Part shown: positions 3,501 to 62,120 of the stretch, piece by piece
How positions within the stretch are numbered: the first letter of the stretch is position 1
How the letters are laid out: each line of letters begins with the position of its first letter
DNA from: Octopus sinensis
Taxonomy: Eukaryota
NCBI RefSeq assembly: GCF_006345805.1
Contig: NC_043005.1
Location: 21,824,001-21,888,000, forward strand
Length of the DNA: 64,000 bases
Direction: 5' to 3'
Made by a program: the position numbers and the translations under genes
The notes under the pieces: generated by a model
Seen by the model: the letters and a program-made list of their open reading frames with translations, nothing else
Database searches by the model: none
Told to the model about the DNA's origin: nothing

Positions 3501-6500
3501 ACAACAGGTTCTGAAGCCTGGCTGGAATGAAGCCACTGGTTTCTCTTAATAGGATTATGAAAATACATCTGTCTTTCATCCGCAGCTGTAATTCAATGCC
3601 AAAAATAGGCATCATGAGGAGTTGGCCACAATTGTTGGTAAATGTTCACATGTCATTGAGCCTAGTCATTGGTTCGTTCAAGAGGAACTTCTCCACAGCA
3701 TCTGTTCACAAGTCTGAGCTTATGGTGGTGTTGATTAATGGTGCTTTGCGAAGGACCAAGTTCTGCTGACCATGTATGTCTGTTTGGGCTTGGTTTTTGT
3801 TCAGCCATTTCTAGCAAAGCAAAGTCTTCCACAACAGAAGGTCTCCCTGGCCTTGGTTTGTCTTTGAGGCTGGTGTCATCTTAAAGTGTTTAAAACAGCT
3901 TTGTGGCTGATGTTCATAAACAGTTCCTGGTCCTTCCAAATCACTAATTTCTTTTGCCATTGCCCTTACACTTAATCCTTTTTTCTACAGCTTCAATAAA
4001 ATGGCTCTAATTGCAATTTTTCCACCACTCATTATCAAAGCTGTAAAATAAAGGATAACCAATTTGTGATTAATATGTTCATCATTATCATCATCATCAT
4101 CATCGTTTAATGCCCGCTTTCCATGCTAGCATGGGTTGGACGATTTGACTGAAGGCTGGCGAACCAGAAAGCTGCACCAGGCTCCAATCTGATCTGGCAG
4201 AGTTTCTACAGCTGGATGCCCTTCCTAACACCAACCACTCCGAGAGTGTAGTGCGTGCTTCTACATGCCACTGGCATGAGGGCCAGTCAGGCAGCACTGG
4301 CAATGGCCATGCTCAAATGATGTTGTTTACGTGCCACCTGCACAGGAACCAGTCCAGCAGCACTGGCAATGACCTCACTCGAATGTCGTTTTTCACATGC
4401 CAGTAAGGTGATGCTAGTAACGATCACACTCGAATGGTGCATTTTACGTGCCACCAGCAGGGAAGCCAGTTTGCTGCTCTGGCAATGATCACACTCAGAT
4501 AGTGCTCTTAGCGTTCCATTAGCACAGATGCCAGTCATCGAATTTGATTTTGATTTCACTTGCCTCAACAGGTCTTCGCAAGCAGAGTTTAGTGTCCAAT
4601 GAAGGAAAGGTATGCATAAGTGGACTGGTTACACCCCTGGCATTGGCCACAAGGTTATGGTCTCACTTGGCTTGCTGGTTCTTATCAAGCCCAGCATATT
4701 TCCAAAGATCCCGGTTACTAGTCATTGAGAAGAAAATGCATACATTCATACATACGTACGTACATACATACATACATACATACATACATGCATACATACA
4801 TATATACATACATACATACATGCATACATACATTTTTATACGTGTGTTTGCATCTGTGTATGTATTTGTCTTTGTGAGCAGATGTCTTCAGATTATTACG
4901 CTCAATACTTTTCATCGTAAGATTGTCATTAACTCCTTATTCTCACCCTCCCCCAAACATACTCTCACCATTGACACCAGTTTCTTCTTTCAATTCCAGT
5001 TTACTCCGAAGTTAACTGTGGACCACCAAAAGACATTGTTGGTGCTGACAAGTCCTACAATAGCACCTCCTATAATTCTGAAGCGACCTACACTTGTCCA
5101 GAAGGAGACAAACTAAAGTCAAAATGTAAAAAGGATAATAAATGGTCTCCAGTAAATTCTTCATGTAAAGGTAATGTAAATAACTTCCTTTTTGTTGTCA
5201 CTGTCAGGGTAATCTTATTTTATTTTTGTGCTAAATGTCTTTGCCAGAGGAAGTCAGCTGACTCTTTGACAATTTATGCAGTGTTTGTAGCTGGTGGAAG
5301 AGACAAAGGAAGTTGTCCTCAGACCAGATACTTCCCAAAATGCTTGCAACAGAGTGGACATCATTAATTCTATCCTAGGGTAAAGTATTAAATTGGGTGA
5401 CAGATTAAGTCTCTCAACAGAAAATTTGAAATGTGATGGTCTGTTCCCTCCAGCAGATATCCATAGTTTCCATTTACCAGATTTCATCCTTAATTCCGAA
5501 GCAAATTTTTAACAAACTTTTCATCACATAACTAAGATTCTACCCAGGACCACAGTATTTTGAAGTATTGTTCTTAACCTCATAGTCATACTGAGGATGT
5601 CTATGTAGATCTCTTAATTTCCAACCTAACCTTTTTCCCTTGTACCATGTATCCTCATCCAAAACTCTGTGCAATATAATGCTCCTAAGTCCTTCCTCAC
5701 TAAAATTCAACAATCTTTTGAAATAGCCTTCCAATACTCTAACAATTCTTCTAATCTACCACCCTTAATTGTAATAAATGCAATTAATATCAATGATGGG
5801 TTTCTTTTAATTTATTCACAAGGCCAAGAATTTTTGATGGCAAGAGTTTAGACTTTTCCCTTGACTTCAGTACTTGAATAGTACTGACTTTTATCAATCC
5901 CCAAATGGATAACAGGCAAAGTTGACCTTTACTGGATTTGAACGCAGAGCATAAAGAGCTTAAATATACAATGTTACAGATTTTTGCCAATGTTCTAATG
6001 ATTCTTTGAGTGAACAATTCTTAATTATAAAAATATTAACAATTATTAACATATAAAAGCAGATGGTATATATTTAAAAAGAAATGATGATGATAACAAC
6101 AACAGTGATGACACCAATGATGTCATGAACAATGATAGCACCATCAATAACAAGGGTGCCATCAACAATGACAATGGCAAGGACACTGACAAATCCACCA
6201 ACAACAATGTTCATGGTGCATTCCTGCAAATACAGGAGGACTCTTCTCTATGGCTTATCAAGAAATCCCATGGTCCAAAATCACTGTATACACTGAGTAG
6301 ATATATCCTCACCAATTGTCATCCTCTGACCTACAACCTCATACAGATTTGTCCCAATAACTCTTGTAAATTTTGCCACTTACACACACTTTTGATTGAA
6401 TTTACCCTTCCCACCCTCACTTTCATTTACAAGTGAAACTTTAAAACACAATGAATTATCAACCAAAGTTACAATTGGACATTTCAAACATCCACCTCCA

Positions 6501-9500
6501 ACTTTCTTTTTTATGGCTTCACGAATATAACATCATAAATTCTAGATCCATGATAGAATGCATTCAGTATATTTTGTAATATATGTAGTAAATTAGTATT
6601 GAGATCACAGTGTTGAGAGGAACTTTATTCTTGTCTTGACCACGGTATGATGACAACCTATGAAATACTGGTGCCATAATTAAATACACCTTGTACAATC
6701 TGTTAAGTAGTTGGTGTTCAGAAGGGGATCCAGCCAAGAAAGTATGCCAAAATAAAACATACAAGTGAGAAGTGCCCCCGATTTCTGACCAGGGTTTGAG
6801 GGGCAGTAACTTTGAATAAAAACTGACTCAGATATGACAAGCTGTCTAGTCCTAGCCAGCATCATGGAAAGAGGACATAAAATGATAATGATGATGATAT
6901 ATATATATATATACATGGTTTTATATGTGTGTGTTGGTTTCTTGATACAAACAGGAAAAAATAGGGCTCAAAAGACAAACATATAAATTGATTTTTAACT
7001 GCAGAACTTGTGTGTGTGGGTGTCTCCCCACATGTTCAGATCATCACTTCTGATGGTCAAATCATTGTCAGAGTCTTCTCTTTTGCTCATTCCATCTTAT
7101 TCCTCTTATACTTAAATTTTTCCTCAACACATTTGCACTTTCTATGCATGCACAATAATGTTGCACATTCATTAGATCACACTAGCTCTATTTTCTCTCT
7201 AGTCTTTGTACATCTTCTGTATTTATGGCCTTTCTCTCACTGCCATGTATTGTAGGTGATGATACACAAGTAACACACAATCTGCCTTTCACTCATAGTG
7301 AGAGACCATTTGGTGCCACCAGAGCTTATAGCTTTCTGAACTTTCTCCATCTTGTTATTCAACTATACATACTTAACATCCTCTTCCTCTGCTAATTAGG
7401 TCACCAAGTTAAGAGAAACCATTTACAGCTTCCAGGGAACCTCCTGGGAATTCGAGAAAATCCAGTTCCTGTGTGTTTATTGTTTCTGCACATCTGTCAC
7501 GTACAAAGACATCTTTCTTGGTTAACATTCCTGTGATTCCAGTGCATCTCTGATGTGTCCATATGTCGCACTGGGTACACCATATGGAATTCCTACCAAC
7601 ACCTTTCCTATATATTGGGCAGAGCACGCACATAATATACATGCAGTATTGATATCAATTTCTGTTCTCAATTTCAGCTTATGCAAATATTAACTGCGGA
7701 ACTCCAAAGGAAGTTGTTGGTGCATCAAAGTCCTACAAAACAACCACCTATAAATCTGAAGTGACCTATACTTGTCCAAAGGGAGAACAACTAAAGTCAG
7801 TATGTGAAAAGAACAATAAATGGACTCCAGTGGTAGAAGCCTGTGAAGGTAACGCAAATAGCTCATCTACTGTTGTTTCTGTCTATGTAATTTTGTTTTA
7901 TTTTTATGTTAAATGTGTTTGTCAGTGGAAGACTAACAGAATGCATACTAAGTTCTATTGTGCTTATGGCTGATGATGAAGGAGAACTTGTTATCCTTGG
8001 ATCAGAGATCTCACAAATGCTTGCAACAGAGTGGACATCATTAATTCTACCCAGGGGCCAGGTGATGGTATTAAACTAGAGAATGGATTAAGTCCAGGAA
8101 ACAAGAGTTGGTAGCTTAGAAACTTGTTCTTCTCCTGCAAGCTTTCACATAACTTGTATCCACTATATTTCATTCCCAAAGCTTAGTTGTGAAGTTAATT
8201 TTTAACCATGCAGACAAAACTCCACCATCCTCGATATTATTGTAAACTTATTACCTCCAAATCTAATCTTGATGGATATTCTCTTAATTTCTAACTTGAT
8301 TTTTCTCACCCATTCTTTGTGGCATCCTGCCTGTTAAGTGGGGATAAATATAATGTATGAGTTCTTCTTTACTAAAACTCTGCACTTCTCTGAAACAGTC
8401 TTCTGATGTTCTTGTTATCTTCCAATCCACCACCCTTAAAAATAATATTGCTACTAATAATAATAATGAAGATTTCTGATTTAGTCACAAACCAATTATT
8501 TCTGACATCATCTTCATTACCATCATCATTTAACAGCTGTTTTCTATGCTCACATGGCTTGGATGGTTTGACAGTGTCCAGTGAACCACAGAACTGCATC
8601 AAGCCCCAGTGTTAATTTTGGCATGGTTTCCACAACTGAATAACTTTCCTCACAGTAAACACTTTACAGTGTGAACTGGATCCCTTTCCTTGGTACTAGT
8701 AAGGTCACCATTAACTTGCAAGACAAAATAAAGGAAAATGAAGAAGCCCCCTTTTGAGAAAGAAGGAGCTACATTTGTGAAGGATGAAGTATAATAGAGG
8801 GAGGAGCATAGTTGTTTTACTATAGAGGGAATGCATGTTTACTCCATGTTATATGAGGGTGGGTGTGAGTAGCTGAAAGAGAGATAAAATTTGTGATGGC
8901 AGGGTGCCAGATCTCACTTTCAAGGCACAAGAAGGTTATTATAAGAAAGAATATAGACAGTTGATCAAGAGGGAAGGAAAGGGTGGATAATTTAATAAGA
9001 GTATGGGAAGAGAGTGTCAGATGGTTAGAGACTGGGCTAGAGGTAGGTGTAGTGAGGGATGAAAAAGGGTGAGTGTTGTTGATGGTAAATATCAGTATGG
9101 TGGGGAAGTTGAAAGATAGAAGTGGCTCAAGAAAGGTGGGGATGACAAGCAGCATCACATGAGAAGTGGAGAGCATCAGTATCATATATGGGTGGAGAGA
9201 TGAGAAAGTAAGGAGATGATATATAGGATGATAGTGTGTAGGGTGAGAGGGTGTGACTTCAGCAGCTGAGTAGTACTAGGTACACATGAAATGTAAATAT
9301 GAGGATGAGGATGCAATCCTTTTGAATGTTGAAGAATCTCTGTCTAGAAACATTTCTAGAAACCCACCATCAAAGATCACCCTGAACTTCAAGTTCAAGT
9401 GCCCTCTCCAATTATTGTTCTCTGAGCTACAGGTTTATGCACTGTAATCCCCATTCACTCAAGCCATTTTTACCATGCTCACTTTGCTTTCAGTAATTTA

Positions 9501-11597
9501 CCTTGAGAACAGTACCTTCCTCTCTATCCCTGCTCTCTCTGCAAGTGAAATTTACAAATGCAGATGAGGGATTGACCAAGGAGGAAGTCATTATTGTCTG
9601 ACATTTCAAATTCATTCACTTAACGATCTCATTTGCTATAGGTACCTCACAGAGGTAAAATGCTGTCTCTGCCCAGATAAAGAAGGGTGTGAGGTAATCA
9701 TTCTACACATAATACCAGCTGTTTGATATAACTTCACAACCCAACAATGCATGCATCTCAAATTGGCTTGTCCTAGCATTTCATTGAATGGAGATTTTAT
9801 TTTGATCCAGGAGAGCCCCTTTGTTAGCACTGCCAAAGCAAGGACTTCAGAAAGTTTCCCAGTGTTATTCCTTGAACAAAAAGTCCTTCAAAACAAACTT
9901 AGCAGTTCATTGTCAATGATGACCAATTAAACCTGAGAATGTCATTGTTTTATCCCCCCATTAACTCTCAATAGATTGTTAGAGTGGAACATTCACCAAT
10001 CTCATTGCCTCGGTCATATCTGATCTTGTACACTGTATTTTCTGTATTTTTTTTTATTACATTAGATAATGTGAATACCTTTTTTAAAGATGGTTAGGAA
10101 TGATTGATATTTCTGACATATTGGGCATCTACATAGGGATGCTGAACTTAATATTGCAAGCTCAGAGATTTGACACAGCATATCCTCTGATTTAATCTGT
10201 TACCTGGTTCAGCACCACTACCTGGCCATTCAGCTAGTTGTGGTGATTGTAGTGGACAATACTTGGTCAATATTTATATATTTACTAGCAGCGATACCCA
10301 GCATTGCCCGTGTTCCATACAATTGAAGAATTAGACTTTTCTGTTATATTTTCTCTAATGAACTGGAATATCTATATTTCGAATTTCATCAAAATTGCAG
10401 ATGAGAGTATTTTCCTCTTTATTCACCCCCAAAAAATTGTAATCGTATCACATGTATCCCATACTGCTGATTTTTATGCGCATATTCCAAAATTCCAGTC
10501 TTATTGAACCTGTTAAAAAGATTTTGCTCCTGAAAAATGAAGGTCATGGAGCTCTAAAATGTGAGAGTTAAGGCACCTGTTGGGAGTGGGCATCTTAATG
10601 TCAACCAGAAAAGTTGAATTGTTGAGAATCTTTTTAACTTGGGTCTTATATCTATTGTTTGAATTTCTTTGAAATAGGAAATATATGTTCACTGAGTTTG
10701 TAAAAGAGAGCAAAGCTAAAGGAAACCAAAAGACAAATGATCACAATAAGCAGTCAGTTATCCTACCCTAGTTGTTACCACTCCTAATGTAGGATTCCTC
10801 ACCATCCAGGTGATAGGCACAGCCGTAAGATGCATTACGAATCTATAGCAATTGGAAGAGCATGGCCCAACTAAAATAAACATTAACAACTGTGTGATGT
10901 GAGGGCTAAGGAGAAATGAAAGTGTCACCTCTGGAGTTTGCAAATGATCACTATACTGATACGTAACTGGACAGAATAAACTTACAATCTATAAATGTCT
11001 TTGAATAACCAGTCACTCATCTGGGAAGGCCTTGAAATCAATGTTAGTATCTGGGGACTATGTGTGACCGAGTGATAATAGAAAGACTGAAAGGAGGTCT
11101 GCAATCAAATAACTTTACTCAACACTTTGAAACTGATGCAAAGATGCCTCTCAATTACTCGACAATTTATGCACCACATTGCAGAAATTCCAATGTAAGT
11201 GCATGTCAAAGCAAACTGTCACACTGTTGTACCATTGAATTAAAAATAATGCTCAAATTTATGCTCGGGTAACCCTACAGCTTCCAAGAGCACAACTGTA
11301 TTCGTTTTTGCTTAGATAAAATGACAAAATTATGGGTGTTAAGTCCCCATGGAGGGGTCTTTCTAACTTGTAAGAAGATGAAACTTTATAAATATTACTT
11401 CATTTGTGTCTAATATCTATGGTTAAGATTTCATCAACAGCAAAAATATATGAATTGTCATGGGGGTTATGGCTCTTATGCATAGAATATAATTTCCAAA
11501 TTTCATAAAGATCCATTCACTACTTTTGCCTAGTTTTGGATCATAAAAGAAATACTAAAATTTGGGAGTTAAGGCTCCCGTTAGGGTGTTATATATA

Positions 11598-11682
<85 letters not shown>

Positions 11683-11687
11683 GATAA

Positions 11688-11738
<51 letters not shown>

Positions 11739-33751: not shown

Positions 33752-33805
<54 letters not shown>

Positions 33806-35093: not shown

Positions 35094-35127
<34 letters not shown>

Positions 35128-36946: not shown

Positions 36947-36977
<31 letters not shown>

Positions 36978-48241: not shown

Positions 48242-48327
<86 letters not shown>

Positions 48328-52743: not shown

Positions 52744-52779
<36 letters not shown>

Positions 52780-52878
52780 TATATATTAAGATGGAGAGAT
52801 TTGCCTTGCAGTTACTTTGCATTGTTCTGGCCTTACCCACGTTCCTTTATATTATACATATATATATATATATATATA

Positions 52879-52955
<77 letters not shown>

Positions 52956-54391
52956 TTATATATATATTATTGAGTTAGAAAACAGAGTGTTCTAAAGGAT
53001 ACAAATTTATTCATTAATTAATCAACATATTAACCAACAATTGTTTCATTTCTCAAATAAGATTAAAATTACAAAATATATATAAAAATATACTTTTGCA
53101 TTTTAAATACCTTATAAGGAAAATTTTAATTTTATTTGAGAAGTGAAACAATTGTTGGTTAATATAATGATTAATAAATTAATTTGTATCCATTAGAGCT
53201 CTCTGTTTTTTTAACTCAATAAAAATGTATGATATCTTATGATATTCTATATAATATATTCATTGAAAGATTATCTCTTAAAAACTTGCTATATTAAACC
53301 AGTGTACCTTGGATAAAAATCCCTAGAAGAAGTATGAATATCTTCATTGTGACTATCTATATTTATATTTATATATATAGCTGTGTGTAGTTTGTTTTAG
53401 TCAATATTTTTATTTCTAAATTCACCTTGATTTCCTTGTTCTCAACCACTCCTGGTATACATGCACCACTGATATCAATTTCTCTTATCTTTCAGCTTTC
53501 AGAGAAGTTGACTGTGGACCACCAAAAGATGTTGTTGGTGCCAAGAAGTCTTACAAAACCACCACCTATAAATCTGAAGTAACCTACACTTGTCCAGAAG
53601 GAGAAAAATTACAATCAGTATGTAAAGAGGATCGTAAATGGTCTCCTGTAGCGTCTGCTTGTAAAGGTAAATTAATGTAATCAGGTTCTCTCTTGATGTC
53701 TCTGTTTCAGTAATTTTGTTTAATTTTTTTCTTAGATATTGTTGTCAAGTTATAGCTCAGCTCATCTTCGTCATTTTCCTCTTCATTTTTAACTCTTCTC
53801 TTTTCACCCATTCTTCATGTCATCATCTGAAACTTTGTACAATAAATAGCCCTGGGTACTTCTTTACTAGAATTCAGCAGCTGACTGAAAGATTTCTGAT
53901 GCTTTACTGATCTTCCAGTTCACTATTCTAAATTATGATAATAATTTGAAATATTGGCACAAGGTCAGTAATTTTAGGGGAGGAGTAAGTCAATCACATC
54001 AACTCCAGTGCACCATGGGTATTTATTTTATCGACCCCAAAGGGATGAGAGACAAAGTCAGCTTTGGCAGGGTTTGAACTCAGACTGTAAAGACAGACAA
54101 AATGCTTAGCAGCAGTTTGTCTGGCATGCTAACAATTCTGCCAGCTCACCACCTTATCCTAAATTATGATAATATAAAAAATAACGATCTTTCTAGGTGA
54201 GAGGGAAAAAAATTTAGATAGAAGGGGTTTAGTCATTATTATTGACTCCAGTGCTTGACTTGTATTACGTGATATTGGTCCCCACAAGAAAGAAAAGCAA
54301 AGGTGACATAAGCTAGATTTGAACTGAAAACATGAAGAGTCTAAGTAATTCCCTGAAGTATTTCTTCTAATGCTCTAATTAGTATACAGGT

Positions 54392-54422
<31 letters not shown>

Positions 54423-57400
54423 CCATCAGTTTTCCATGATAGTATGGGTAGGACAGTTTGACAGGAACTTACAAGTCAAAAAACTTCACCAAGCTCTACT
54501 GTCTGTTTTAGCATGGTTTCTATGGTTGCATACACTTTATAGAGTAAACAGGATGCTTTTTACATGGCTCCAGCACCAAAGAGATCACCACATAGCTTAC
54601 AGACAAGACTCTCAACTGGTGGGGGAGTAGTATTGAGTAGTATGTTGTGTACTTGAAGAGAATCTTGGCTTCCTCAAATGAAGAAGTGAGAGACAAGAGA
54701 AAAATGGTGCAGGTGTGACAGAAGTGGGGGCAGGGGCCATAGACTCATATACAGGGTGATGTGTATAATGGAATAGACCAGGGATCAGAGAGGTGGGTGA
54801 TTGAAAATTAGAATGATGATACAATTCTGTGGAATGAAGGAGGTTCCCTATCAGGAGCCAATTGAAAAACCTCACGATCAACAATCATCAGTAACTCCTA
54901 GGACAAGTGTCCTCTCCAATTAATATTTAAGCACTGTGGGCCACATCTACTTTCACATGAATTTTTTAAAATTCCCTTGAGGAGAGCATCTTCCTCTCTA
55001 TCCTCACAAGGGAAACTTTAAAAATGCAGATTAGGGATTGACTAAAGAGGAAGTCCCCATTGTCAGACCTTTCAACCTCATCCACCACACAACCTTTTTT
55101 GTCATAGCAACAAAACAGAGAAAAACTGCTTTCTCTGCTGGATTAAAAGAACATGTGGGGCAATCATCATGATGGACATAGCTGACAGACTAATTTGAAC
55201 CACACACAATAGCTGCTGTTTGACTTAAGGCTACAAGTCAAAAATGTCTGGACATTCAACATGGATATGTAAAATTAGTTTGTTGCACTGTGCAGATCTC
55301 AGATAGGACTGTCTGATGACACCTCTGTGGCTGTAGATTATATATTGGGCTTTTAGAGCCCTTTGGTAGACTTTTGCCAAGGACTTCAGGAAGTTGTCCA
55401 TAGTATTCTTGGAACAAAAAGTTATCTTTCAAATAAATTTTTTACCTCATTTTAATCAAAATCCAGAGAGTTTCTGAGAATGTCAGTGCTCTTTCCCTCT
55501 GATGAATCTTTTATTAACTACTAGAGTGTAATACCTACCATTTCTATTGCCCAGTTGAGGTTTGATCCATCCAGTATGTTTAGGACTACTTTAGATAACC
55601 TAGCCTTCCTTTTTTCATATAGTGGAGTGTGATTGAGAGAGATTTTCATAATAGGTCTACCAAGATGGGCATCTACACTGGGGGCTTTCAACATGATGGT
55701 CAACAGTAAATATTGAACTTAAAATTGCAAGCTAACAGATATGACATGGTTTATCCTCTTGTATGAATTTTTAATCTTTTTTAGTACCACTTTCTGACAC
55801 TTCAGCTAGTCAAGGTGATGGTTGTGAACAATGCTTGATCCAATGTAAACATATTTATTGCAATAATAGACACTGACATTGACCACCACCACCACCACTA
55901 CTCCTAGATGTTCATGTAGGGCATTGATCACATTAATCTTACAAGTGTAGGAGGGAGTGTGGCTTCAGAATTTCATGACAGCTATTTTTGCCACTGTTAG
56001 CTTATTCAAAGATATGAGGACCACCTCATTGTAATAAGTTATGTATTCATTATTAAGGTAAATGGCCAAACATAATTAGAGAAAGCAATGAAAGTGAGTG
56101 ATATTCATGTCTTACTTAAGAGTAGTGACTGTCTAAGTAAAGTGAACTGACTTGGACAGAGAATCAAATCCATATTACTCACTCAAGCCATGTATATGTA
56201 CCAAGACAACAATGCAGGAAGTTACTCAGGTCATTTCCTGCATGGGAAACGAATAGTGAAGTGGCTACTTATTGAATCAAGGTATTATGATTTCACCCTC
56301 AAAGTCTTGTAAAATTATTGTTAATGACTCATTCATTAAAAGAATAATTTTGATTAATTAATATTTCTTAGCTTGTTACATTAAATTGTGGCTGTCCACA
56401 TTTACTACATATATATTTATTCACCAGACAATGATGAAAGTAAAATTATTTTAGTTTTTCTAGGCGTAATGTTGCAAAATGTGATGGGTTGTAGGCCTTG
56501 TCATGACCAGCCAGATTTAGTTATGTCCTTTTACATTCTGGGTTCAAATCACACTTGGATGTACTTTTGGTTCATAAAGTAAACATTAGTCAAGCAGCAA
56601 AATAGATTTCTTCATATGTATTCTCACTGCAGAATGAGTGGCTTTGGCCACACCAATCCTAAAATATCATTCTAAAGATTACAAGCCACCAATCTCATAG
56701 CTACAAGATAATGCAAGAGTCATTCAAAACTTGAATAAATAAGCTTTACATTAGACAAAATAATTTGAATGCGAAAGGGTTAAGTTAGGAACCATTATCA
56801 TTAATATTGTTACCATCAACAATAATTATAATTATTCTTGGGCGTTGGGCTTCACGGAGGCAAAGGGGCTTGGTTTCTTTCGAGCACTGGTCCTCATGGA
56901 GGCAAAGTGGATAAGTTCCTTTTGAGCATTGGGCTTCATGGTGGCAAAGTGGATGAGTTCCTTTCAAGCATTGGGCCTCACGGAAGCAAAGTGGTTGAGT
57001 TCCTTTCGAGCATTGAGCCTCATGGAGGCAATGTGGCTGAGACTGTTTGGAGTGTTAAGCCTCACAAAGGCAATTACCAAGACCTTTGGCATTATTTTGT
57101 ACTTGAGAAGAAGCCCCATCAAGCTGAGCAAAATCATAATCATGACAGATACTGGTATCATACAAATAGCACCCATGCCAGTGGTATGGAAAAGCACCCA
57201 TTACACTCTCACAGTGGTTGGAGTTAGAAAACCATGCCAAATCATACTGGAGTCTGGTGCAGCCTTCCAGTTTGCCAGACCCGCTCAAAGTATCCAACCT
57301 ATGCCAGCAAGGCATATGTTAAATGATGATGATGATGATTCTTCTTCTGATAAGGAGGTATTCATAGAATCATTTGAACATCAGGCAAAATGTGTTGTGG

Positions 57401-60400
57401 TTTTAGTTCTAGCTCTTTAACTTCGAAGTACATATCCTGCTGATGTTAACTTTCCCCTTCTTGGGCCAATAAAATACAATACTACTCAGGTATATAGTAC
57501 AATGTAATTGACCACATTCTTCCTCAAAGTTTTGGCCTTCTTTCAATGTTAGAAATTATTTTTGTTGTTCAGATCGACTACATCCTCGCCAGAAAGAGAG
57601 AAAGAGGGCTGTTTATAAATGCCAAAACCTTCCCAGGCGAGGAATGTACTCCTCAACATAGATTAGTAGTTAGCGACTTCAGGATCAGGGCCAAATGGCT
57701 GCCCAGAAGAAGACCAGCTCAGAGGAGAAGAGTCTGGAAACTTAAAGGTCCTGTAAATGGACGGAGATTTAGAGAAGTTCTACTCGAAGCTTTCGACGAA
57801 ATAGAAGAGGAAATAGCTTCACATAGTGTAGAAGACAACTTGAGGTTTCTACAGGACAACCTGCTGAGAGCCACTGACCAGATCTGTGGATGGAGCAAAG
57901 TCCCATCTCGTCCCAGGGTAACGTGGTGGTGGAACAATGTTGTAGACAGGGCTATTAGAGACAAGAGACAGGCTTGGAAGGACTGGAGGAAAGGCGGTAG
58001 TAGGGAATTGTATCAGACTGCGAAAAGAGAAGCTAAGAGACAGGTATATTTAGCTAGAGGGGAAGCAGATAGGAAAAAATTTGCCAATGTTCTGCACCGT
58101 GAGGACCAAAGACTTGAGGTGTTTCGTGTTGCAAGACAGTGTGTGAGAGAGAATCGTGATGTGGTAGGAGAGAAATGTGATCGCATGGATGATGGTTCAC
58201 TTGCGCTAAATGAGGATGCAAAGAGAGAGGTTTGGAGATGCCACTATGAAAGGTTGCTCAACAAAGAGAATGAATGGGATAAAGAGAGTCTGCCGAATGT
58301 CGACCCAATAGAGGGACCAGCCATCCGAGTTGACAGTTCCATAGTAGTTAAGGCAATTGGAAGCATGAAGACAGGGAAAGCCCCAGGCCCATCAGGAATT
58401 ACTGCTGAGATGCTCAAAATATCTAGCAGTGTCGGCTATAGCCTAGTCACCCGTATAGTTAACCAGGTGATACACGAAGGAGTCATACCCAATGACTGGT
58501 GTAGTAGCATAATAGTCAACTGTTACAAAGGTAAAGGTGACGCCCTAGATACAAGTAATTACAGAGGTATCAAGCTGTTGGACCAGGTAATGAAGGTTAT
58601 GGAAAGGGTCATGGCCCAACTGATTAGAGAGAGAGTCAACTTGGATGAGATGCAGTTTGGTTTCGTGCCAGGGAAAAGCACCACTGATGCCATATTTCTG
58701 ATAAGACAGCTGCAGGAGAAATACCTAGCCAAAGATAAAATTCTGTACCTGGCTTTCATTGACTTGGAGAAAGCCTTTGACAGGGTCCCCCGTTCCCTTA
58801 TCTGGTGGTCAATGAGGAAACTAGGGATAGATGAATGGTTAGTGAGAGCTATGCGTGCCATGTACAGGGATGCTGTTAGTAAGGTGAGGGTTGGCAACGA
58901 GTATGGTGAAGAATTCCGGGTGGAGGTTGGGGTTCACCAAGGCTCAGTCCTCAGCCCCCTCCTATTTATCATAGTCCTCCAGGCAATAATGGAGGAATTC
59001 AAGACAGGATGCCCCTGGGAGCTCCTCTATGCTGACGACCTTGCTCTAATTACTGAATCACTATCAGAACTCGAGGAGAAGTTTCAGGCGTGGAAGCAAG
59101 GATTAGAATCGAAAGGACTTAGAGTCAATCTAGCTAAAACCAAAGTCCTAATAAGTAGGAAGGTAGACAAATCTCAAACGCCTTCAGGTAGATGGCCCTG
59201 CTCGATCTGTAGAAAAGGCGTAGGTAGGAACTCTATAAGATGCACCAAGTGTAAGCTATGGACACATAAGAGGTGCAGCAATGTCAAAGGAAGGCTAACT
59301 AGGAATATAGTTTTTGTATGTGGCAGATGCTCTGGTGCAATAAACACTGAAAATGCGCAGAGACCATCTTCCGCCACATTCCAGGGAGAAAAACTTGAAA
59401 TAGTTGATAGTTTCCATTACCTAGGTGACCAAGTCAGTTGCGGGGGTGGGTGTGCCGAAAGTGTAACTGCTAGAGTAAGAATAGCCTGGGCAAAGTTCAG
59501 AGAGCTCTTACCTCTGCTGGTGACAAAAGGCCTCTCGCTCAGAGTAAAAGGCAGACTGTATGACGCATGTGTGCTAACAGCCATGCTACATGGCAGTGAA
59601 ACATGGGCCGTGACTGCTGAGGATATGCATAAGCTCGCAAGAAATGAAGCCAGTATGCTCCGTTGGATGTGTAATGTCCGTGTTCATACCCGACAGAGTG
59701 TAAGTGCCTTGAGAGAAAAGTTAGACCTAAGAAGCATCAGATGTGGTGTGCAAGAGAGGCGTCTACGCTGGTATGGACACGTAGTAAGAATGGATGAAGA
59801 TAGTTGTGTGAAAAAGTGCCACACCCTAGCGGTTGAGGGAACCTGTGGAAGAGGTAGACCCAGGAAAACCTGGGATGAGGTGGTGAAGAACGACCTTCGC
59901 TCTTTAGGTCTCACCGAGGAAATGACCAGAGACCGAGACCTTTGGAAGTATGCTGTGCGCGAGAAGACCCGGTAGGACAAGTGAGGCCATAACCCATGGC
60001 CCCTACCTGGGACGTAGTCAGTCCACCTGTGCATACCTTCCTTCTTGGGACACATAACTCTACTTGTGAAGACCTGTTGAAGCAAGTGAAAATCAAAAAA
60101 TCAAAATCGATGAACATCAATGGAATTTGTAGTGTTGTGATACCAGTGCCGGTGGCACATAAGAAAACCATCCGAACGTGGCCATAGCCAGTACCACATC
60201 GACTGGCCTCCGTGCTGGTGGCACGTAACAAACACCATCTGATCGTGGCCATGCCGGTGGCACGTAAAACACACCATCCGAGCGTGGCTGTTCGCCAGCC
60301 TCGTCTGGCACCTGTGTTGGTAGCACATAAAAAGCACCCACTACACTCACGGAGTGGTTGGCATTAGGAAGGGCATCCAGCTGTAGAAACACTGCCAGAT

Positions 60401-61063
60401 CTGACTGGCCTGGTGCAGCCTTCGGGCTTCCCAGACCCCAGTTGAACCGTCCAACCCATGCTAGCATGGAAAGCAGACGTTAAACGATGATGATGATGAT
60501 GATGATGTTAAGTTTCCAATTGTTTCAATCTTGCTTTAATTCCAGCTGCTAAGATCCATTTTGTGAAAGTAAAAGATGCAGTTCTGGATGTATCTGGGAA
60601 AGCATTGTTTCACCAGAAAAATATATCAGCAGATGATTGTGCTACAGTGTGTTTGTCTGATGAAACTTGTTTGTCATTTGAAATAAAGAAGGAAGATGGA
60701 GAATGTTATTTATCAAAGAAAACTGCAACTAAATCCAAGAAAATGAAATCAACCCAAGGCTATGATTATTACCAGCGAATACAACGTAATTATTCTTTGT
60801 ATTTTATTGTTGGATTCTCATTTCCTCTTTTTTTGAAATTTGTGATTCCATTTGTACTTCTACCATGATAGATCGCTAGCCACTAAACATTTTTCTATTT
60901 TCTCTGCCTGTTTATATCTGTGTTCTTTTCTGCTGAAAAGCATAGGCTCGAAACATAAAAGACTTTCTCACTTCTTGAGTATTAAACTAATGCATCTGTT
61001 TGTTGTTTATACAGCTGTCTTCACTTTTTGTAAATTTTCCAAATTCTCACTATATACACTATA

Positions 61064-61146
<83 letters not shown>

Positions 61147-61984
61147 GTATATAATTCTAAGAGAGTTAGAGGTTGTGAATCCAACCAACTAAGGGATAAT
61201 ATCTAGCCAGTATACTGCTGGTAGAATACCCAATTATAAATGCACAAGTGTTTTTTTCATTGCATGGCAATTATATTATTGAGTGTAATAAATGGGTGAT
61301 GGTAAAACGTTATTTTACCCTTAATTTATATAGCAATAAGAAAATGGAGGGGATCAAGAGTTGATATGTATTTATATTTATAACTTAACCTTATGAACTT
61401 TCTAAACTCTCTACTGAAGCCCAGAGACACACCCAAGTACCTTAATCTTATCTACCAAATACTTCAGTTCACTGGAGGGATAAAAGTAGAATGGGGTACT
61501 ATAGCCTCTTGGCTGAAACAGCTGTAAGATTTTACCCTACTTTCTATGTTCTACGTTATATATTTTAATAATTACTGATATTTTTATATTTTATATATTA
61601 TATATGTAAAGCATAATATGTTATACATGTATGTATATTGCTATAATTTGTACATTTGAACAATTTATGCTTTGGACGCTATATAATTTTTAATGTGAGT
61701 GTGTGTGAGAGTATAAAATGTATTTCTTATTTTCTTCCTTTTTTTCCTAGACAAAGATGATGTTTTGATACTTAAAAGCACTTCCGTACCAGGGTATGAT
61801 ACATTTGAGCGGCTGAAAGATGTGAGCTTAAAGGAGTGTGATCATGCTTGTCATCAAAATCCAGGATGTAACTCTTATGAGTATAATGAAAAACTTAAGT
61901 TGTGTGATCAAAGTAATGTGACTCACTTGACTCAGGACCTTGTACCCGACACATGGGAATGGAATACTTACATCATTAACCCAG
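283..61984 (+). CDS. Partial multi-exon gene (16 exons in window, 1107 codons) encoding a large, probably extracellular PAN/apple + sushi (CCP) repeat protein; both ends lie outside the window
   Basis: 16 exons have polypyrimidine-AG acceptors and GT donors, lengths 171/231/234/240 nt, all phase 1-1. The concatenated frame has no stop. Cys spacing matches PAN/apple (C-x3-C-x5-C-x-S-[FY]-x7-C) and sushi (4 Cys, W before the last Cys). There are many N-x-S/T sequons. Confidence 0.88.
2955..4075 (-). mobile_element. Degenerate mariner-family DNA transposon
   Basis: Minus-strand fragments resemble mariner transposase (..[20 protein letters not shown], cf. ELLPxGxTINxxxYxxQL), with many stops and frameshifts; related to 33866-34930. 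Confidence 0.65.
4085..4732 (-). mobile_element. 5'-truncated RTE LINE copy (ORF end + 3' UTR + (GAT)n tail)
   Basis: Reverse complement matches ~59910-60506, including the ORF-terminal RDLWKYA region and the CATGCTAGCATGGAAAGC..TTAAACGATGATGAT tail. Confidence 0.8.
5000..5170 (+). CDS. Exon 2 (Sa): compact sushi/CCP domain
   Basis: caattccag|TT TAC ... TGT AAA G|gtaatg; 171 nt; [56 protein letters not shown] (not shown in this frame by the ORF track). Confidence 0.87.
7400..7645 (-). mobile_element. Old fragment of the PHD-containing RTE RT region (paralogous relic at ~40790-40985)
   Basis: Translation [44 protein letters not shown] resembles the PHD insert of the 57570-59975 ORF. Confidence 0.75.
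7678..7848 (+). CDS. Exon 3 (Sb): compact sushi/CCP domain
   Basis: aatttcag|CT TAT ... TGT GAA G|gtaacg; 171 nt; [56 protein letters not shown]. Confidence 0.87.
11596..11760. repeat. Compound microsatellite (TA)n-(GA)n-(GATA)n-(CA)n
   Basis: Direct reading. Confidence 0.95.
12036..14350 (-). mobile_element. RTE (BovB-like) LINE, 5'-truncated and frameshifted
   Basis: Overlapping minus ORFs carry RT motifs [66 protein letters not shown], a C-terminal [14 protein letters not shown] and [11 protein letters not shown], and an RTE-type 3' end. Confidence 0.88.
14388..14510 (+). mobile_element. RTE endonuclease fragment, inverted relative to the adjacent RTE body
   Basis: + strand reads [39 protein letters not shown], an APE endonuclease motif of RTE. 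Confidence 0.75.
14772..15011 (+). CDS. Exon 4 (B1): PAN/apple type B domain
   Basis: aattccag|TT TCT CAG ... GTT AAA T|gtaatt; 240 nt; [79 protein letters not shown]. Confidence 0.85.
16070..16300 (+). CDS. Exon 5 (A2): PAN/apple type A domain
   Basis: tttttccag|CT GAC ... AAC CCA G|gtgagt; 231 nt; [76 protein letters not shown]. Confidence 0.88.
17160..17575 (+). mobile_element. RTE 3' UTR-derived repeat with (GAT)n-like tail
   Basis: Matches 60140-60506. Further copies lie at about 6700-6900(+), 8515-8650(-), 22478-22690(-), 24770-25100(+), 28860-29300(+), 33465-33714(+), 37953-38113(-), 40110-40250(-), 42030-42185(-), 46580-46978(+), 54392-54600(-) and 56830-57345(+). Confidence 0.75.
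18880..20450 (+). mobile_element. Degenerate Tx1/L1-clade LINE ORF2 (RT region); flanking 18180-18750(+) and 20480-20950(-) may be ORF1 remnants
   Basis: [69 protein letters not shown]; stops and frameshifts. The ORF1 assignment is tentative. Confidence 0.8.
21267..21437 (+). CDS. Exon 6 (Sc): compact sushi/CCP domain
   Basis: tctttcag|TT TAC ... TGT AAA G|gtaaat; 171 nt; [56 protein letters not shown]. Confidence 0.87.
22035..22240 (-). mobile_element. tRNA-derived SINE (paralogous copy at ~53955-54155)
   Basis: Reverse complement has pol III A-box (TGGCAGAAT) and B-box (GAGTTCAAACC) followed by a body seen repeatedly in the window. Confidence 0.6.
25370..25609 (+). CDS. Exon 7 (B2): PAN/apple type B domain
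   Basis: aattccag|TT GCT ... ATA AAA T|gtaatt; 240 nt; [79 protein letters not shown]. Confidence 0.85.
27690..28272 (+). mobile_element. Mariner transposase relic, 3' half with TIR-like end
   Basis: [25 protein letters not shown], a YSPDLAPSD-like motif; ends in AAACTTTTCAGCTGACTTCG-TA. Confidence 0.75.
28388..28621 (+). CDS. Exon 8 (A3): PAN/apple type A domain
   Basis: ttttctag|CC AAA ... AAC CCA G|gtcagt; 234 nt; [77 protein letters not shown]. Confidence 0.88.
29390..30300 (+). mobile_element. Tc1/mariner superfamily relic, maT (DD37D)-like
   Basis: HTH region [27 protein letters not shown], then [27 protein letters not shown]; several stops. Confidence 0.75.
30353..30420 (+). pseudogene. 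tRNA-derived sequence (tRNA-Thr-like pseudogene or SINE head) with a shortened anticodon arm
   Basis: D-stem GCTT/AAGC around AATGGTA, T-arm GTGAG-TTCGAGT-CTCAT, A and B boxes; anticodon arm is ~5 nt short, so not a functional tRNA. Confidence 0.5.
30775..31460. repeat. Degenerate (CA)/(TA)-rich low-complexity tract with an internal ~140 bp tandem duplication
   Basis: 31011-31090 recurs at ~31150-31230. Confidence 0.8.
32816..32986 (+). CDS. Exon 9 (Sd): compact sushi/CCP domain
   Basis: aatttcag|TT AAC ... TGT TAC G|gtaaca; 171 nt; [56 protein letters not shown]. Confidence 0.87.
33866..34930 (-). mobile_element. Degenerate mariner-family DNA transposon
   Basis: [28 protein letters not shown] is the mariner HTH/RSGRP motif; same family as 2955-4075. 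Confidence 0.75.
37182..37352 (+). CDS. Exon 10 (Sa'): compact sushi/CCP domain, paralog of exon 2
   Basis: aatttcag|TT CAC ... TGT AAA G|gtaatg; 171 nt; [56 protein letters not shown]. Confidence 0.87.
41017..41187 (+). CDS. Exon 11 (Sb'): compact sushi/CCP domain, paralog of exon 3
   Basis: aatttcag|TT TAT ... TGT GAA G|gtaatg; 171 nt; [56 protein letters not shown]. Confidence 0.87.
43331..43570 (+). CDS. Exon 12 (B1'): PAN/apple type B domain, paralog of exon 4
   Basis: aattccag|TT TCT ... GTT AAA T|gtaatt; 240 nt; [79 protein letters not shown]. Confidence 0.85.
44530..45350 (-). mobile_element. Gypsy/Ty3 LTR-retrotransposon pol relic (RNase H end to integrase Zn-binding region)
   Basis: [27 protein letters not shown] and (H)[24 protein letters not shown]; no LTRs recognised. 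Confidence 0.7.
46055..46500 (-). mobile_element. SINE-like interspersed repeat (unclassified)
   Basis: GC-richer block bounded by simple-repeat tails and absent from the paralogous intron 15012-16069; family not named with certainty. Confidence 0.45.
47347..47577 (+). CDS. Exon 13 (A2'): PAN/apple type A domain, paralog of exon 5
   Basis: tttttccag|CT AAC ... AAC CCA G|gtcagt; 231 nt; [76 protein letters not shown]. Confidence 0.88.
48795..49290 (-). mobile_element. 3' end of a restriction-like-endonuclease LINE (R4/Dong-like); shorter copy at ~17665-17840
   Basis: Minus strand: [27 protein letters not shown].. and [21 protein letters not shown], typical RLE C-terminal motifs. Confidence 0.65.
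49780..52075 (-). mobile_element. Tx1/L1-clade LINE, 5'-truncated and frameshifted, ORF2 RT to C-terminus
   Basis: [76 protein letters not shown]-terminal [21 protein letters not shown]. Confidence 0.85.
52582..52636 (+). ncRNA. Type I hammerhead-ribozyme-like motif (Penelope-type minimal HHR) with U4C core variant
   Basis: Stem I TAACAAAA-CTGT/ACAG-c-TTTTGTTA; core CCGACGA (52594-52600); short stem II; GAAA (52611-52614); palindromic stem III ACTC-c-GAGT; predicted cleavage after GUA (52623). Confidence 0.55.
53496..53666 (+). CDS. Exon 14 (Sc'): compact sushi/CCP domain, paralog of exon 6
   Basis: tctttcag|CT TTC ... TGT AAA G|gtaaat; 171 nt; [56 protein letters not shown] (missed by the ORF track). 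Confidence 0.87.
57570..60506 (+). mobile_element. Young 5'-truncated RTE-clade LINE: uninterrupted ~800-codon ORF (end of APE, RT with PHD insert) + ~530 nt 3' UTR + (GAT)7
   Basis: QIDYIL..QHRLVV (APE), [84 protein letters not shown]; stop at 59973-59975; absent from the paralogous site near 25330. Confidence 0.93.
60546..60785 (+). CDS. Exon 15 (B2'): PAN/apple type B domain, paralog of exon 7
   Basis: aattccag|CT GCT ... ATA CAA C|gtaatt; 240 nt; [79 protein letters not shown]. Confidence 0.85.
61751..61984 (+). CDS. Exon 16 (A3'): PAN/apple type A domain, paralog of exon 8
   Basis: tttcctag|AC AAA ... AAC CCA G|gtcagt; 234 nt; [77 protein letters not shown]. Confidence 0.88.
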
Positions 61985-62120
61985 GTCAGTAGAGTGTTTG
62001 TTTTTATTTTTTTACTTTGTGTGCTCGCATATCTATATGTTTGCATGTATTTACATATACATGTATGTATGTTTATAATAAGTGTGTATATATATGTGTA
62101 TGTATGTATGCATGCATGTA

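What the first reader, a model, noticed from the sequence alone, without database searches (positions are those of the whole stretch)
5000..61984. Duplicated exon pairs differ mostly at amino-acid-changing sites while Cys/Trp and frames are invariant: candidate diversifying selection
Manual codon counts (amino-acid-changing codons : purely synonymous codons) are Sa 7:0, Sb 4:3, B1 16:3, A2 22:11, Sc 16:3, B2 21:6 and A3 7:1, about 93:27 overall. That is near or above the neutral ~3:1 ratio, yet there are no stops or indels and no lost Cys in any pair. By eye the exons are about as diverged as their flanking introns. Many changes swap charge (K/E, K/Q, A/D, N/D, K/T). Inference: a fixed scaffold with rapidly varying surfaces, as in immune-recognition or gamete/egg-coat proteins. 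Counts are by hand and approximate.
Basis: partly seen in the sequence, partly recalled or inferred. Interest (0 to 1): 0.7.

Follow-up and report, generated by a model that had tools for sequence, protein, structure and literature searches.

The report
Duplicated octopus PAN–Sushi exon cassette
Two 32-kb tandem copies of a seven-exon cassette in an octopus gene for a secreted-type repeat protein differ mostly by amino-acid changes, but the pattern fits a conserved disulfide scaffold with freely drifting surface residues, and positive selection is not demonstrated.

Summary
The window holds 16 phase 1-1 exons, each encoding one domain (Sushi, or PAN type B or A), of an octopus PAN–Sushi array gene. 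A ~32-kb cassette of seven exons is duplicated in tandem.

That ratio (3.4:1) is what unselected mutation gives here (3.6:1 in simulation). Formal dN/dS for the pairs is 0.69–0.87 and is not distinguishable from 1 (p=0.10–0.24). dS equals intron divergence (~0.13). Neutral decay is excluded: about 7 stops, 6 Cys losses and 19 indels were expected and none is seen.

Site models on the pairs favour about one third of codons constrained (ω≈0.2) and two thirds near ω=1. An ω>1 class is not significant (p=0.16–0.22). ω after the duplication (0.67) equals the family background (0.62).

Across 73 exons from this and two Octopus genomes, M2a and M8 are nominally very significant (about 13% of codons, ω≈2.5–2.8). 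My calibration shows that test is anti-conservative. A topology-free test on 18 sister pairs, with 80% power, finds nothing.

Verdict: fixed scaffold with fast surfaces is supported; diversifying selection is unproven.

The parts
283..516 (+). Exon A1: PAN domain, type A. Lies upstream of the duplicated cassette and has no partner in the window.
   Evidence: AG/GT borders, phase 1-1, 234 nt; Pfam PAN_1; 79% aa identity to the last domain of P0005.
5000..5170 (+). Exon Sa: Sushi/CCP domain, copy 1.
   Evidence: Pair Sa/Sa': 9 nt differences, 7 aa-changing and 0 synonymous codons, ω 2.1–2.35, not different from 1 (p=0.39).
7678..7848 (+). Exon Sb: Sushi domain, copy 1.
   Evidence: Pair Sb/Sb': 8 nt differences, 3:3 codons, ω 0.22 (p=0.06 against 1).
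14772..15011 (+). Exon B1: PAN domain, type B, copy 1.
   Evidence: Pair B1/B1': 23 nt differences, 16:3, ω 0.78.
16070..16300 (+). Exon A2: PAN domain, type A, copy 1.
   Evidence: Pair A2/A2': 38 nt differences, 22:11, ω 0.45–0.51.
21267..21437 (+). Exon Sc: Sushi domain, copy 1.
   Evidence: Pair Sc/Sc': 20 nt differences, 15:3, ω 1.0.
25370..25609 (+). Exon B2: PAN domain, type B, copy 1.
   Evidence: Pair B2/B2': 32 nt differences, 20:6, ω 0.73–0.77.
28388..28621 (+). Exon A3: PAN domain, type A, copy 1.
   Evidence: Pair A3/A3': 9 nt differences, 6:1, ω 1.3–2.0 (not significant). This is the only exon clearly less diverged than its flanks (3.8% against 12.8%, p=0.001).
32816..32986 (+). 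Exon Sx: unpaired Sushi exon between the two cassettes.
   Evidence: It is not a sister of any other S exon in the window.
37182..37352 (+). Exon Sa': copy 2.
   Evidence: Lies in a ~1-kb block at only 4.9% non-coding divergence from copy 1.
41017..41187 (+). Exon Sb': copy 2.
43331..43570 (+). Exon B1': copy 2.
47347..47577 (+). Exon A2': copy 2.
53496..53666 (+). Exon Sc': copy 2.
60546..60785 (+). Exon B2': copy 2.
61751..61984 (+). Exon A3': copy 2.
2821..28713 (+). Copy 1 of the tandemly duplicated segment, as far as it aligns colinearly with copy 2.
   Evidence: Colinear BLAST chain of 14 blocks: 9696 non-coding columns, p=0.119, 13.2 gap openings per kb.
33737..62080 (+). Copy 2 of the duplicated segment. 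It carries retroelement insertions that copy 1 lacks.
   Evidence: Intact reverse-transcriptase ORF at 57546–59975.

Best explanation
The window lies inside a very large, octopus-specific tandem-array gene (or gene cluster). It encodes an extracellular-type protein built of repeated modules, Sushi(1–3)–PAN(B)–PAN(A). Each domain sits on its own phase 1-1 exon.

A ~32-kb segment carrying seven such exons was duplicated in tandem. The copies have since diverged by about 12–13% at neutral sites, with patches of lower divergence that suggest gene conversion.

Both copies are still maintained as spliceable coding exons. Selection removes frameshifts, stops, and changes to the four cysteines and core aromatic or hydrophobic residues of each domain, which is about one third of codons (ω≈0.2). 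The remaining two thirds, mostly charged or polar positions, change at about the neutral rate (ω≈0.8–1).

The high ratio of replacement to silent changes is therefore the long-term baseline of this weakly constrained, redundant repeat family. It is not a burst after duplication, and it needs no positive selection.

Shown: exon structure, the duplication, the rates and the constraint classes. Inferred: both cassettes are expressed in one transcript, the protein is secreted or adhesive, and the low-divergence patches are conversion tracts.
For: Structure:
- 16 phase 1-1 exons give one 1106-aa frame.
- Pfam PAN_1 130 bits and Sushi 34.5 bits.
- The same module grammar occurs in 57 further clean exons from O. 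bimaculoides and O. sinensis loci.

Rates:
- Pairwise ω is 0.705 (NG86), 0.79 (ML) and 0.87 (YN00).
- My ML fit gives 0.776, with the LRT against 1 at p=0.24.
- dS of 0.12–0.13 equals the intron JC distance of 0.130.
- The neutral simulation gives N:S of 3.6:1 against 3.44:1 observed.

Constraint:
- 0 stops against 7.4 expected, 0 Cys losses against 6.2, and 0 indels against about 19.
- M1a beats M0 strongly; M2a is not significant on the window trees (p=0.16) or the window pairs (p=0.22).
- Across 18 independent sister pairs, M0 ω=0.68 is below 1 (p=0.003), M1a gives 33% of codons at ω=0.2 and 67% at ω=1, and M2a adds exactly nothing.
- That sister-pair test is well calibrated and had 80% power against the family-wide M2a estimate.

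No burst and no dead copy:
- Terminal ω is 0.67 against a background of 0.62 (p=0.78).
- Copy 1 at 0.51 against copy 2 at 0.92 gives p=0.30.
- Internal against terminal ω on the full trees is not significant.

Cross-validated classes give ω of 0.22, 0.80 and 1.23 in the window pairs.

Conversion: non-coding divergence ranges from 4.9% to about 20% among blocks (chi-square 173, p=4e-30).
Against: - Family-wide site models on 73 exons favour a class of about 13% of codons at ω≈2.5–2.8. M1a against M2a gives 2ΔlnL=74.5, M7 against M8 gives 67.5 and M8a against M8 gives 64.7.
- This survives half-exon-specific trees (47.8) and alternative NJ trees (74.5 and 103.8).
- It exceeds all 20 null simulations, whose maximum was 19.0.
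- Charge-changing replacements are modestly enriched (p=0.019).
- The window duplicates have a higher N:S ratio (93:27) than O. bimaculoides' own recent duplicates (22:18; p=0.008).
- ω=1 at two thirds of codons could also be a balance of positive and negative selection.
- No expression data for these exons were available.
Confidence: 0.58

Rival explanations
1. Genuine diversifying (positive) selection acts on a minority of surface codons (about 10–13%, ω≈2.5–3.5) of the PAN and Sushi domains, including in these two cassettes. The array would then be a rapidly diversifying recognition or adhesion protein, for example salivary or venom-gland, immune or reproductive.
For: - Family-level LRTs of 2ΔlnL 48–104 under four sets of trees, all above 20 null simulations.
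- The 57 non-window exons alone give 54.3.
- The window pairs alone give a point estimate of 11% of codons at ω=3.5.
- Flagged columns rank highest in the window pairs (ω 1.23 > 0.80 > 0.22) and show no excess of synonymous change, so they are not mutation hot spots.
- Charge changes are enriched.
- One O. sinensis pair has 38 replacement against 3 silent codons, ω=3.5, p=0.014 uncorrected.
- A homologue (GON-Abd-1) was named from an Abdopus aculeatus sequence. By my recollection, not checked here, it comes from a posterior salivary (venom) gland transcriptome.
Against: - No test restricted to the window's pairs is significant.
- The 18-sister-pair test, which needs no tree and is calibrated, gives 2ΔlnL=0.00. 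Under the family M2a estimate it had 80% power and never fell below 1.9 in 60 simulations.
- The ω predicted for flagged columns (2.45) is rejected in the window pairs (p=0.03).
- The full-tree procedure is anti-conservative: 3 of 12 null replicates exceeded the 5% cut-off and one reached 19.
- Half-exon trees fit far better (ΔlnL≈209), which points to reticulate history that inflates such tests.
- M2a implies a mean ω≈1.0, whereas the short-distance pairs give 0.68, significantly below 1.
Confidence: 0.3
2. One of the two cassettes is no longer used (unexpressed or always skipped) and is drifting neutrally, while the other stays constrained. The pair average then looks like ω≈0.7–0.8.
For: - The point estimates are asymmetric: copy 1 terminal branches at ω=0.51 and copy 2 at 0.92.
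- No protein model covering these exons turned up in the protein search.
- The TE comparison suggests the window may come from the O. sinensis/vulgaris lineage. If so, the O. sinensis annotation, which is in the database, may not have called a gene here.
Against: - The asymmetry is not significant (p=0.30).
- All 14 exons keep AG/GT borders, phase and length.
- By my own scaling of the results, even if only one copy had absorbed half the divergence, about 3.7 stops, 3 Cys losses and 9–10 indels would be expected in it. None is seen.
- The per-pair asymmetry in terminal branch length is not consistent in direction across the seven pairs.
Confidence: 0.06
3. The two copies are an assembly artefact, such as uncollapsed haplotypes placed in tandem, so the 'paralogous' differences are allelic.
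For: The segments are tandem, colinear and of similar length.
Against: - 12% neutral divergence, 128 gap openings and different retroelement insertions in each copy. By my own judgement this is far beyond allelic variation.
- Similar cassette duplications exist independently in the O. bimaculoides locus L001.
Confidence: 0.02

Closest known systems
Octopus bimaculoides LOC128248838 / LOC128248840 and Octopus sinensis LOC118764741 (RefSeq 'uncharacterized proteins'; P0001–P0004)
   Same: Same three exon types, same order Sushi(1–2)–PAN B–PAN A, same phase 1-1 one-domain exons and the same 4-Cys patterns. They sit in arrays of hundreds of kb, with neighbouring gene models of 709 to 4083 aa.
   Different: Only 55–79% amino-acid identity per exon to the window's exons, so they are paralogues or fast-evolving co-orthologues. 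None covers the window's cassettes. O. bimaculoides' own recent duplicates are more constrained (ω 0.14–0.29).
GON-Abd-1 of Abdopus aculeatus (UniProt R4G2C1; P0006)
   Same: An N-terminal hydrophobic leader followed by PAN B–PAN A–Sushi, at about 46–49% identity to the window's domains. This suggests the family is secreted.
   Different: It has a single module followed by a GON domain (PF08685). No GON-like sequence or leader exon is present in the window. That it comes from a venom gland is my recollection of the source study, not a tool result.
PAN/apple module superfamily: HGF and plasminogen N domains, factor XI/prekallikrein apple domains, apicomplexan micronemal lectins MIC4 and SML-2, leech antiplatelet protein
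   Same: Pfam PAN_1, PAN_2 and PAN_4 hits. Profile hits to MIC4 (E=5.6e-10), SML-2 and the HGF N domain. An AF2 model of a homologous module matches FXI apple, SML-2 and the HGF N domain (for example 2.8 Å over about 80 residues). These modules bind proteins or carbohydrates.
   Different: Four Cys per domain instead of the six of classical apple domains. They are arranged in long alternating arrays with Sushi domains. No ligand is known.
   Same: A conserved disulfide scaffold with variable, charge-rich remaining positions, tandem duplication and signs of gene conversion.
   Different: Those systems are defined by demonstrated ω>1 or polymorphism excess. Here the pairs give ω of 0.7–0.9 and no significant positively selected class. 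No expression or ligand data exist. The comparison rests on general knowledge, not on a test made here.

Membership tests
PAN domain (Pfam PF00024) | Profile score above the curated cut-off | tested here: met
   130.2 bits against a cut-off of 21.4, with 5 matched stretches in the copy-1 protein.
PAN domain (Pfam PF00024) | Conserved core cysteines (two disulfides) and the PAN fold | tested here: met
   Four invariant Cys in the 18 B-type and 19 A-type sequences aligned, and likewise in the 21 B and 23 A exons of the full alignment. The AF2 model of the homologous P0004 module (pLDDT 72, B domain 80–92) matches the HGF N domain, FXI apple and SML-2. The window's own spliced module could not be submitted.
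Classical apple domain (factor XI/prekallikrein type) | Six cysteines, including the disulfide linking the N and C termini | tested here: not met
   Only four Cys per domain in every A and B exon.
Sushi/CCP (Pfam PF00084) | Profile score above the cut-off, four Cys and a conserved Trp | tested here: met
   34.5 bits against a cut-off of 20.7. All four Cys are invariant and the Trp nearly so (one exon differs) among the 29 S exons.
Gene or exons under diversifying selection | dN/dS above 1 between the duplicated exons | tested here: not met
   Pooled ω is 0.69–0.87. No pair differs significantly from 1.
Gene or exons under diversifying selection | Site-model LRT (M1a/M2a, M7/M8) significant | tested here: inconclusive
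   Window exons p=0.16 and window pairs p=0.22. The full family gives 2ΔlnL of 48–104, but that test is anti-conservative in my calibration. It is contradicted by the sister-pair test.
Gene or exons under diversifying selection | Independent replication of the fast sites | tested here: not met
   Columns flagged without the window's data evolve at ω=1.23 in the window pairs. ω=1 is not rejected (p=0.52), and the predicted value of about 2.45 is rejected at p≈0.03 (tested at a fixed 2.40).
Pseudogenised duplicate | Stops, frameshifts, lost splice sites or lost structural residues | tested here: not met
   None in 14 exons. The probability of no stop under neutrality is 0.0006 and of no Cys loss 0.0008, and about 19 indels were expected.
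GON-domain salivary-gland protein (GON-Abd-1 type) | C-terminal GON domain and a signal peptide | tested here: not met
   No tblastn match to the GON part or the leader of P0006 anywhere in the window. The gene's ends lie outside the window, so this says nothing about the whole gene.

The most novel reading that the evidence does not exclude
The octopus PAN–Sushi arrays may be a lineage-specific, secreted recognition or adhesion system whose surface residues are under real diversifying selection. The diversity would be generated by cassette duplication, exon-scale gene conversion and possibly alternative inclusion of the all-phase-1 exons. On this reading the window's two cassettes are a young example, and the family-wide ω≈2.5–2.8 class is real.
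Probability: 0.28. Interest if true: 0.6.

Novelty: new member of a known kind. Interest (0 to 1): 0.33.

Why it matters
If the near-neutral reading is right, this is an ordinary case. It shows that a 3:1 replacement-to-silent ratio with intact cysteines is what small disulfide-rich repeat domains in a redundant array produce without positive selection. That makes it a useful caution for scans that flag such ratios.

If the minority reading is right, octopuses carry a very large, uncharacterised, fast-diversifying PAN–Sushi array of hundreds of kb, with gene models up to 4083 aa. Its biology would then be worth finding out, whether saliva or venom, mucus or adhesion, immunity or reproduction.

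In either case the family appears to be undescribed in the literature I could search.

Tried and rejected
- Literature searches for the family returned nothing relevant: octopus + PAN domain + sushi; GON-domain + posterior salivary gland; apple domain + octopus; GON/coleoid/venom.
- Exact-product look-ups for P0005 and for the window's reverse-transcriptase ORF, meant to identify the source species, found nothing. The species is only inferred from TE identities. These reach 94.5% against the O. sinensis loci, which is similar to the identity between the two O. sinensis loci themselves, and at most 88% against O. bimaculoides.
- The window's spliced module could not be submitted for structure prediction. 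A homologous module of P0004 was folded instead. No coordinates are returned, so burial could not be computed. Secondary-structure class did not separate 'positive' from 'constrained' columns (p=0.24).
- Mutation hot spots as the cause of the fast columns: rejected, because synonymous change is not elevated there.
- A burst of change after duplication: rejected.
- Older episodic selection confined to internal branches: no support.
- Uncollapsed haplotypes: rejected on divergence and private TE insertions.
- Additional family exons, a leader or a GON domain in the window: none found.
- My first attempt to fit all site models with free pair distances timed out. Later fits used M0 branch lengths multiplied by one scalar, which is an approximation.
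Full report
WHAT IS THERE. The window is AT-rich animal DNA full of microsatellites and retroelements. On the + strand it carries 16 exons. Each has AG/GT borders and a length divisible by three, and each begins and ends in phase 1. Spliced together they give one uninterrupted 1106-aa frame.

Each exon encodes one small cysteine-rich domain:
- Sushi/CCP ('S', 171 nt).
- A PAN domain of type 'B' (240 nt).
- A PAN domain of type 'A' (231–234 nt).

Pfam scores are PAN_1 130 bits and Sushi 34.5 bits.

The exon order is A1 | Sa Sb B1 A2 | Sc B2 A3 | Sx | Sa' Sb' B1' A2' | Sc' B2' A3'. Self-alignment shows a colinear tandem duplication of about 32 kb, 2821–28713 against 33737–62080, that contains the seven exons Sa to A3. 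The finding's coordinates, 5000 and 61984, are exactly the start of Sa and the end of A3'. No other exon of the family, no leader and no terminal domain lies in the window.

WHOSE GENE. The best protein matches are uncharacterised proteins of Octopus bimaculoides (LOC128248838, LOC128248840) and O. sinensis (LOC118764741), at only 55–79% identity per exon. There is also a match to 'GON-Abd-1' of Abdopus aculeatus, which has a leader, then PAN B, PAN A and Sushi, then a GON domain.

The O. bimaculoides and O. sinensis loci I fetched belong to arrays of hundreds of kb with adjacent gene models of 709 to 4083 aa. All are built from the same phase 1-1 exons in the same S(1–2)–B–A grammar. I extracted 57 further clean exons from them.

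Repeat-element identities suggest the window comes from the O. sinensis/vulgaris lineage rather than from O. bimaculoides. This is an inference only.

The closest solved structures are PAN/apple modules: Toxoplasma MIC4, the Sarcocystis SML-2 lectin, the HGF N domain and the factor XI apple domains. The octopus domains have four cysteines, not the six of classical apple domains. I found no literature on this family.

The seven pairs have identical lengths and differ at 139 of 1458 nt, with no indel and no stop. All 28 Cys and all 7 Trp are conserved.

Exons (9.5%) are as diverged as the intron sequence in the same alignment blocks (8.2%, p=0.14). They are slightly less diverged than all 9696 aligned non-coding columns (11.9%, p=0.0075). 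Only A3 is clearly more conserved than its flanks. About half of the replacements (47 of 93) change charge, against 38.6% expected (p=0.019).

WHAT THE RATIO MEANS. Random mutation of these sequences with the substitution spectrum of the introns gives 98.8 replacement and 27.4 silent codons, or 3.6:1. The observed 3.44:1 is therefore the neutral expectation, not an excess.

Formal pooled estimates are:
- dN≈0.093 and dS≈0.12–0.13.
- ω = 0.705 (NG86), 0.79 (ML), 0.83 (LWL85) and 0.87 (YN00).
- My own Goldman–Yang fit gives 0.776, with the LRT against ω=1 at p=0.24.
- With family-wide codon frequencies it gives 0.69, p=0.10.

dS equals the intron Jukes–Cantor distance of 0.130, so silent sites behave neutrally. 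No single pair differs significantly from ω=1.

NOT DECAY. Under neutrality, 139 substitutions should have produced 7.4 stops (probability of none 0.0006) and destroyed 6.2 cysteines (probability of none 0.0008). At the intron rate of 13.2 gap openings per kb, about 19 indels were also expected. None occurred, and all splice sites are intact.

The terminal branches of copy 1 and copy 2 do not differ significantly in ω (0.51 against 0.92, p=0.30). Both cassettes are therefore being kept as coding sequence.

SITE HETEROGENEITY WITHOUT DEMONSTRABLE POSITIVE SELECTION IN THE PAIRS. On trees of the window's 16 exons:
- M0 gives ω=0.64.
- The nearly neutral model M1a (44% of codons at ω=0.18, 56% at ω=1) is far better (p=5e-8).
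- M2a adds a class at ω=1.5 that is not significant (p=0.16).

Treating the seven pairs as a forest that shares alignment columns gives the same answer. M2a puts 11% of codons at ω=3.5, with p=0.22. ω on the post-duplication branches (0.67) is the same as on the older branches (0.62; p=0.78). The high replacement rate is therefore the family's baseline, not a consequence of this duplication.

THE FAMILY-WIDE TESTS AND HOW FAR TO TRUST THEM. With all 73 exons (29 S, 21 B, 23 A) on neighbour-joining trees:
- M2a beats M1a by 2ΔlnL=74.5, with 12.9% of codons at ω=2.8.
- M8 beats M7 by 67.5 and beats M8a by 64.7.
- The 57 non-window exons alone give 54.3.
- The signal persists with separate trees for exon halves (47.8).
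- It persists on trees built from amino-acid or third-position distances (74.5 and 103.8).

Because the code is my own and the trees are short-alignment NJ trees, I calibrated the test.
- Data simulated under M1a and re-analysed with re-estimated trees gave 2ΔlnL up to 19.0. Three of 12 replicates exceeded the nominal 5% cut-off.
- Simulations in which the two exon halves followed different trees gave up to 9.6 in 8 replicates.

The test is therefore anti-conservative, but the observed value lies beyond all 20 null replicates.

Against this stands a test that needs no tree. It uses 18 mutually nearest sister pairs: 7 from the window, plus 11 made up of O. bimaculoides–O. sinensis orthologous pairs and within-genome paralogous pairs of O. 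bimaculoides and of O. sinensis.
- It gives M0 ω=0.68, below 1 (p=0.003).
- M1a puts 33% of codons at ω=0.2 and 67% at ω=1.
- M2a improves the fit by exactly 0.00.
- The test showed no false positives in 40 null simulations.
- If the family-wide M2a estimates were true, it would have had 80% power and never fell below 1.9 in 60 simulations.

A cross-validation points the same way. I learnt the site classes only from non-window exons and then measured ω in the window's pairs. This gives 0.22, 0.80 and 1.23 for the 'constrained', 'neutral' and 'positive' classes. The ranking replicates. However, ω=1 is not rejected for the 'positive' class (p=0.52), and the predicted value of about 2.45 is rejected at p≈0.03 (tested at a fixed 2.40). 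The approximate interval is 0.65–2.3.

Synonymous change is not elevated at the flagged columns, so they are not mutation hot spots. Internal and terminal branches do not differ in ω. M2a implies a mean ω of about 1.0, while the short-distance pairs give 0.68. Half-exon trees fit much better than whole-exon trees (ΔlnL≈209). Both points suggest that reticulate history, meaning exon-scale gene conversion, inflates the long-tree signal.

GENE CONVERSION. Non-coding divergence between the two copies ranges from 4.9% (a 1-kb block around Sa) and 6.5–7.8% up to 17–20%. This is highly heterogeneous (chi-square 173, df 13, p=4e-30). The B exons of the window cluster together, whereas its A2 and A3 exons do not cluster with each other and group instead with different exons from the O. 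bimaculoides and O. sinensis loci. Both observations fit patchy homogenisation. Conversion lowers dN and dS together, so it does not by itself bias pairwise ω.

CONCLUSION. The step to diversifying selection is not supported. For these exon pairs every formal test is compatible with about one third of codons under purifying selection and two thirds drifting at about the neutral rate, in two cassettes that are both kept intact.

I put about 0.58 on that explanation. I put about 0.3 on real positive selection at a minority of sites: the family-level tests are suggestive but contradicted by the most robust test. I put about 0.06 on one unused copy and about 0.02 on an assembly artefact.

All likelihood analyses use my own implementation. 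It gives pairwise estimates concordant with Biopython's. Site-model fits on the trees used M0 branch lengths multiplied by a scalar. Standard software on complete arrays, polymorphism data and transcript evidence are the decisive missing pieces.

Noticed in passing
window 57546-59975 (+): Intact 809-aa ORF with a reverse-transcriptase domain (RVT_1, E=5e-33) and a weak PHD-finger match. It is a retroelement inserted in the Sc'–B2' intron of copy 2 only, so it arrived after the duplication and is possibly still active.
   Followed up: partly
window 12328-14210 (-), 18885-20116 (+), 50246-52031 (-): Degenerate reverse-transcriptase fragments, broken into several frames, in introns of one copy or the other. 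They account for much of the length difference between corresponding introns.
   Followed up: partly
window 27833-28249 and 29358-30190 (+): Open frames that looked to me like Tc1/mariner-type transposase remnants near the copy 1/copy 2 junction. Pfam gave no hit at E≤0.001.
   Followed up: partly
window 56840-57111 vs 24768-24871: A 42-nt unit is present once in copy 1 and as five tandem copies in copy 2.
   Followed up: no
window 17237-17565, 24924-25102, 29106-29308, 33510-33714, 46582-46980, 57169-57340, 60251-60508: A dispersed ~200–370-nt repeat with an internal ~66-nt tandem unit (ACTGGC…GGTGGCAC…). It is probably a SINE-like element. It also occurs in the O. bimaculoides loci at about 85% identity.
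   Followed up: no
window 4736-5775 / 36925-37957; 21818-22729 / 53736-54636: Blocks of only 4.9% and 6.5% non-coding divergence, embedded in 13–20% background. The second contains no exon. They are likely gene-conversion tracts between the two cassettes.
   Followed up: partly
window 32816-32986: An unpaired Sushi exon (Sx) sits between the cassettes and gives three Sushi exons in a row before B1'. No counterpart is found upstream of Sa in copy 1, so the duplication boundary lies between A3 and a point downstream of Sx.
   Followed up: partly
L003 16950-17183 vs 44920-45153 (O. sinensis): A pair of A-type exons differs by 38 replacement and only 3 silent codons (ω=3.5, p=0.014 uncorrected). 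This is the strongest pairwise hint of positive selection anywhere in the family.
   Followed up: partly
L001 1150/28485, 1609/31439, 9969/38333 (O. bimaculoides): O. bimaculoides has its own recent cassette duplication of about 27–30 kb. Its exon pairs are clearly constrained (ω 0.14–0.29, p=0.001–0.03), unlike the window's pairs (N:S 22:18 against 93:27, p=0.008).
   Followed up: partly
window exons, all A and B types: N-X-S/T sequons are frequent: 7 per cassette, 6 of them shared. One position, 'SNVT'/'NNAT' in the A domains, is conserved across species. This suggests a glycosylated extracellular protein.
   Followed up: partly
L001, L002 gene models (O. bimaculoides): The RefSeq models look fragmentary. 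P0002 starts at an internal Met inside an A domain. P0003 (O. sinensis) appears to contain a retained-intron-like stretch. The arrays may encode fewer and much larger proteins than annotated.
   Followed up: no
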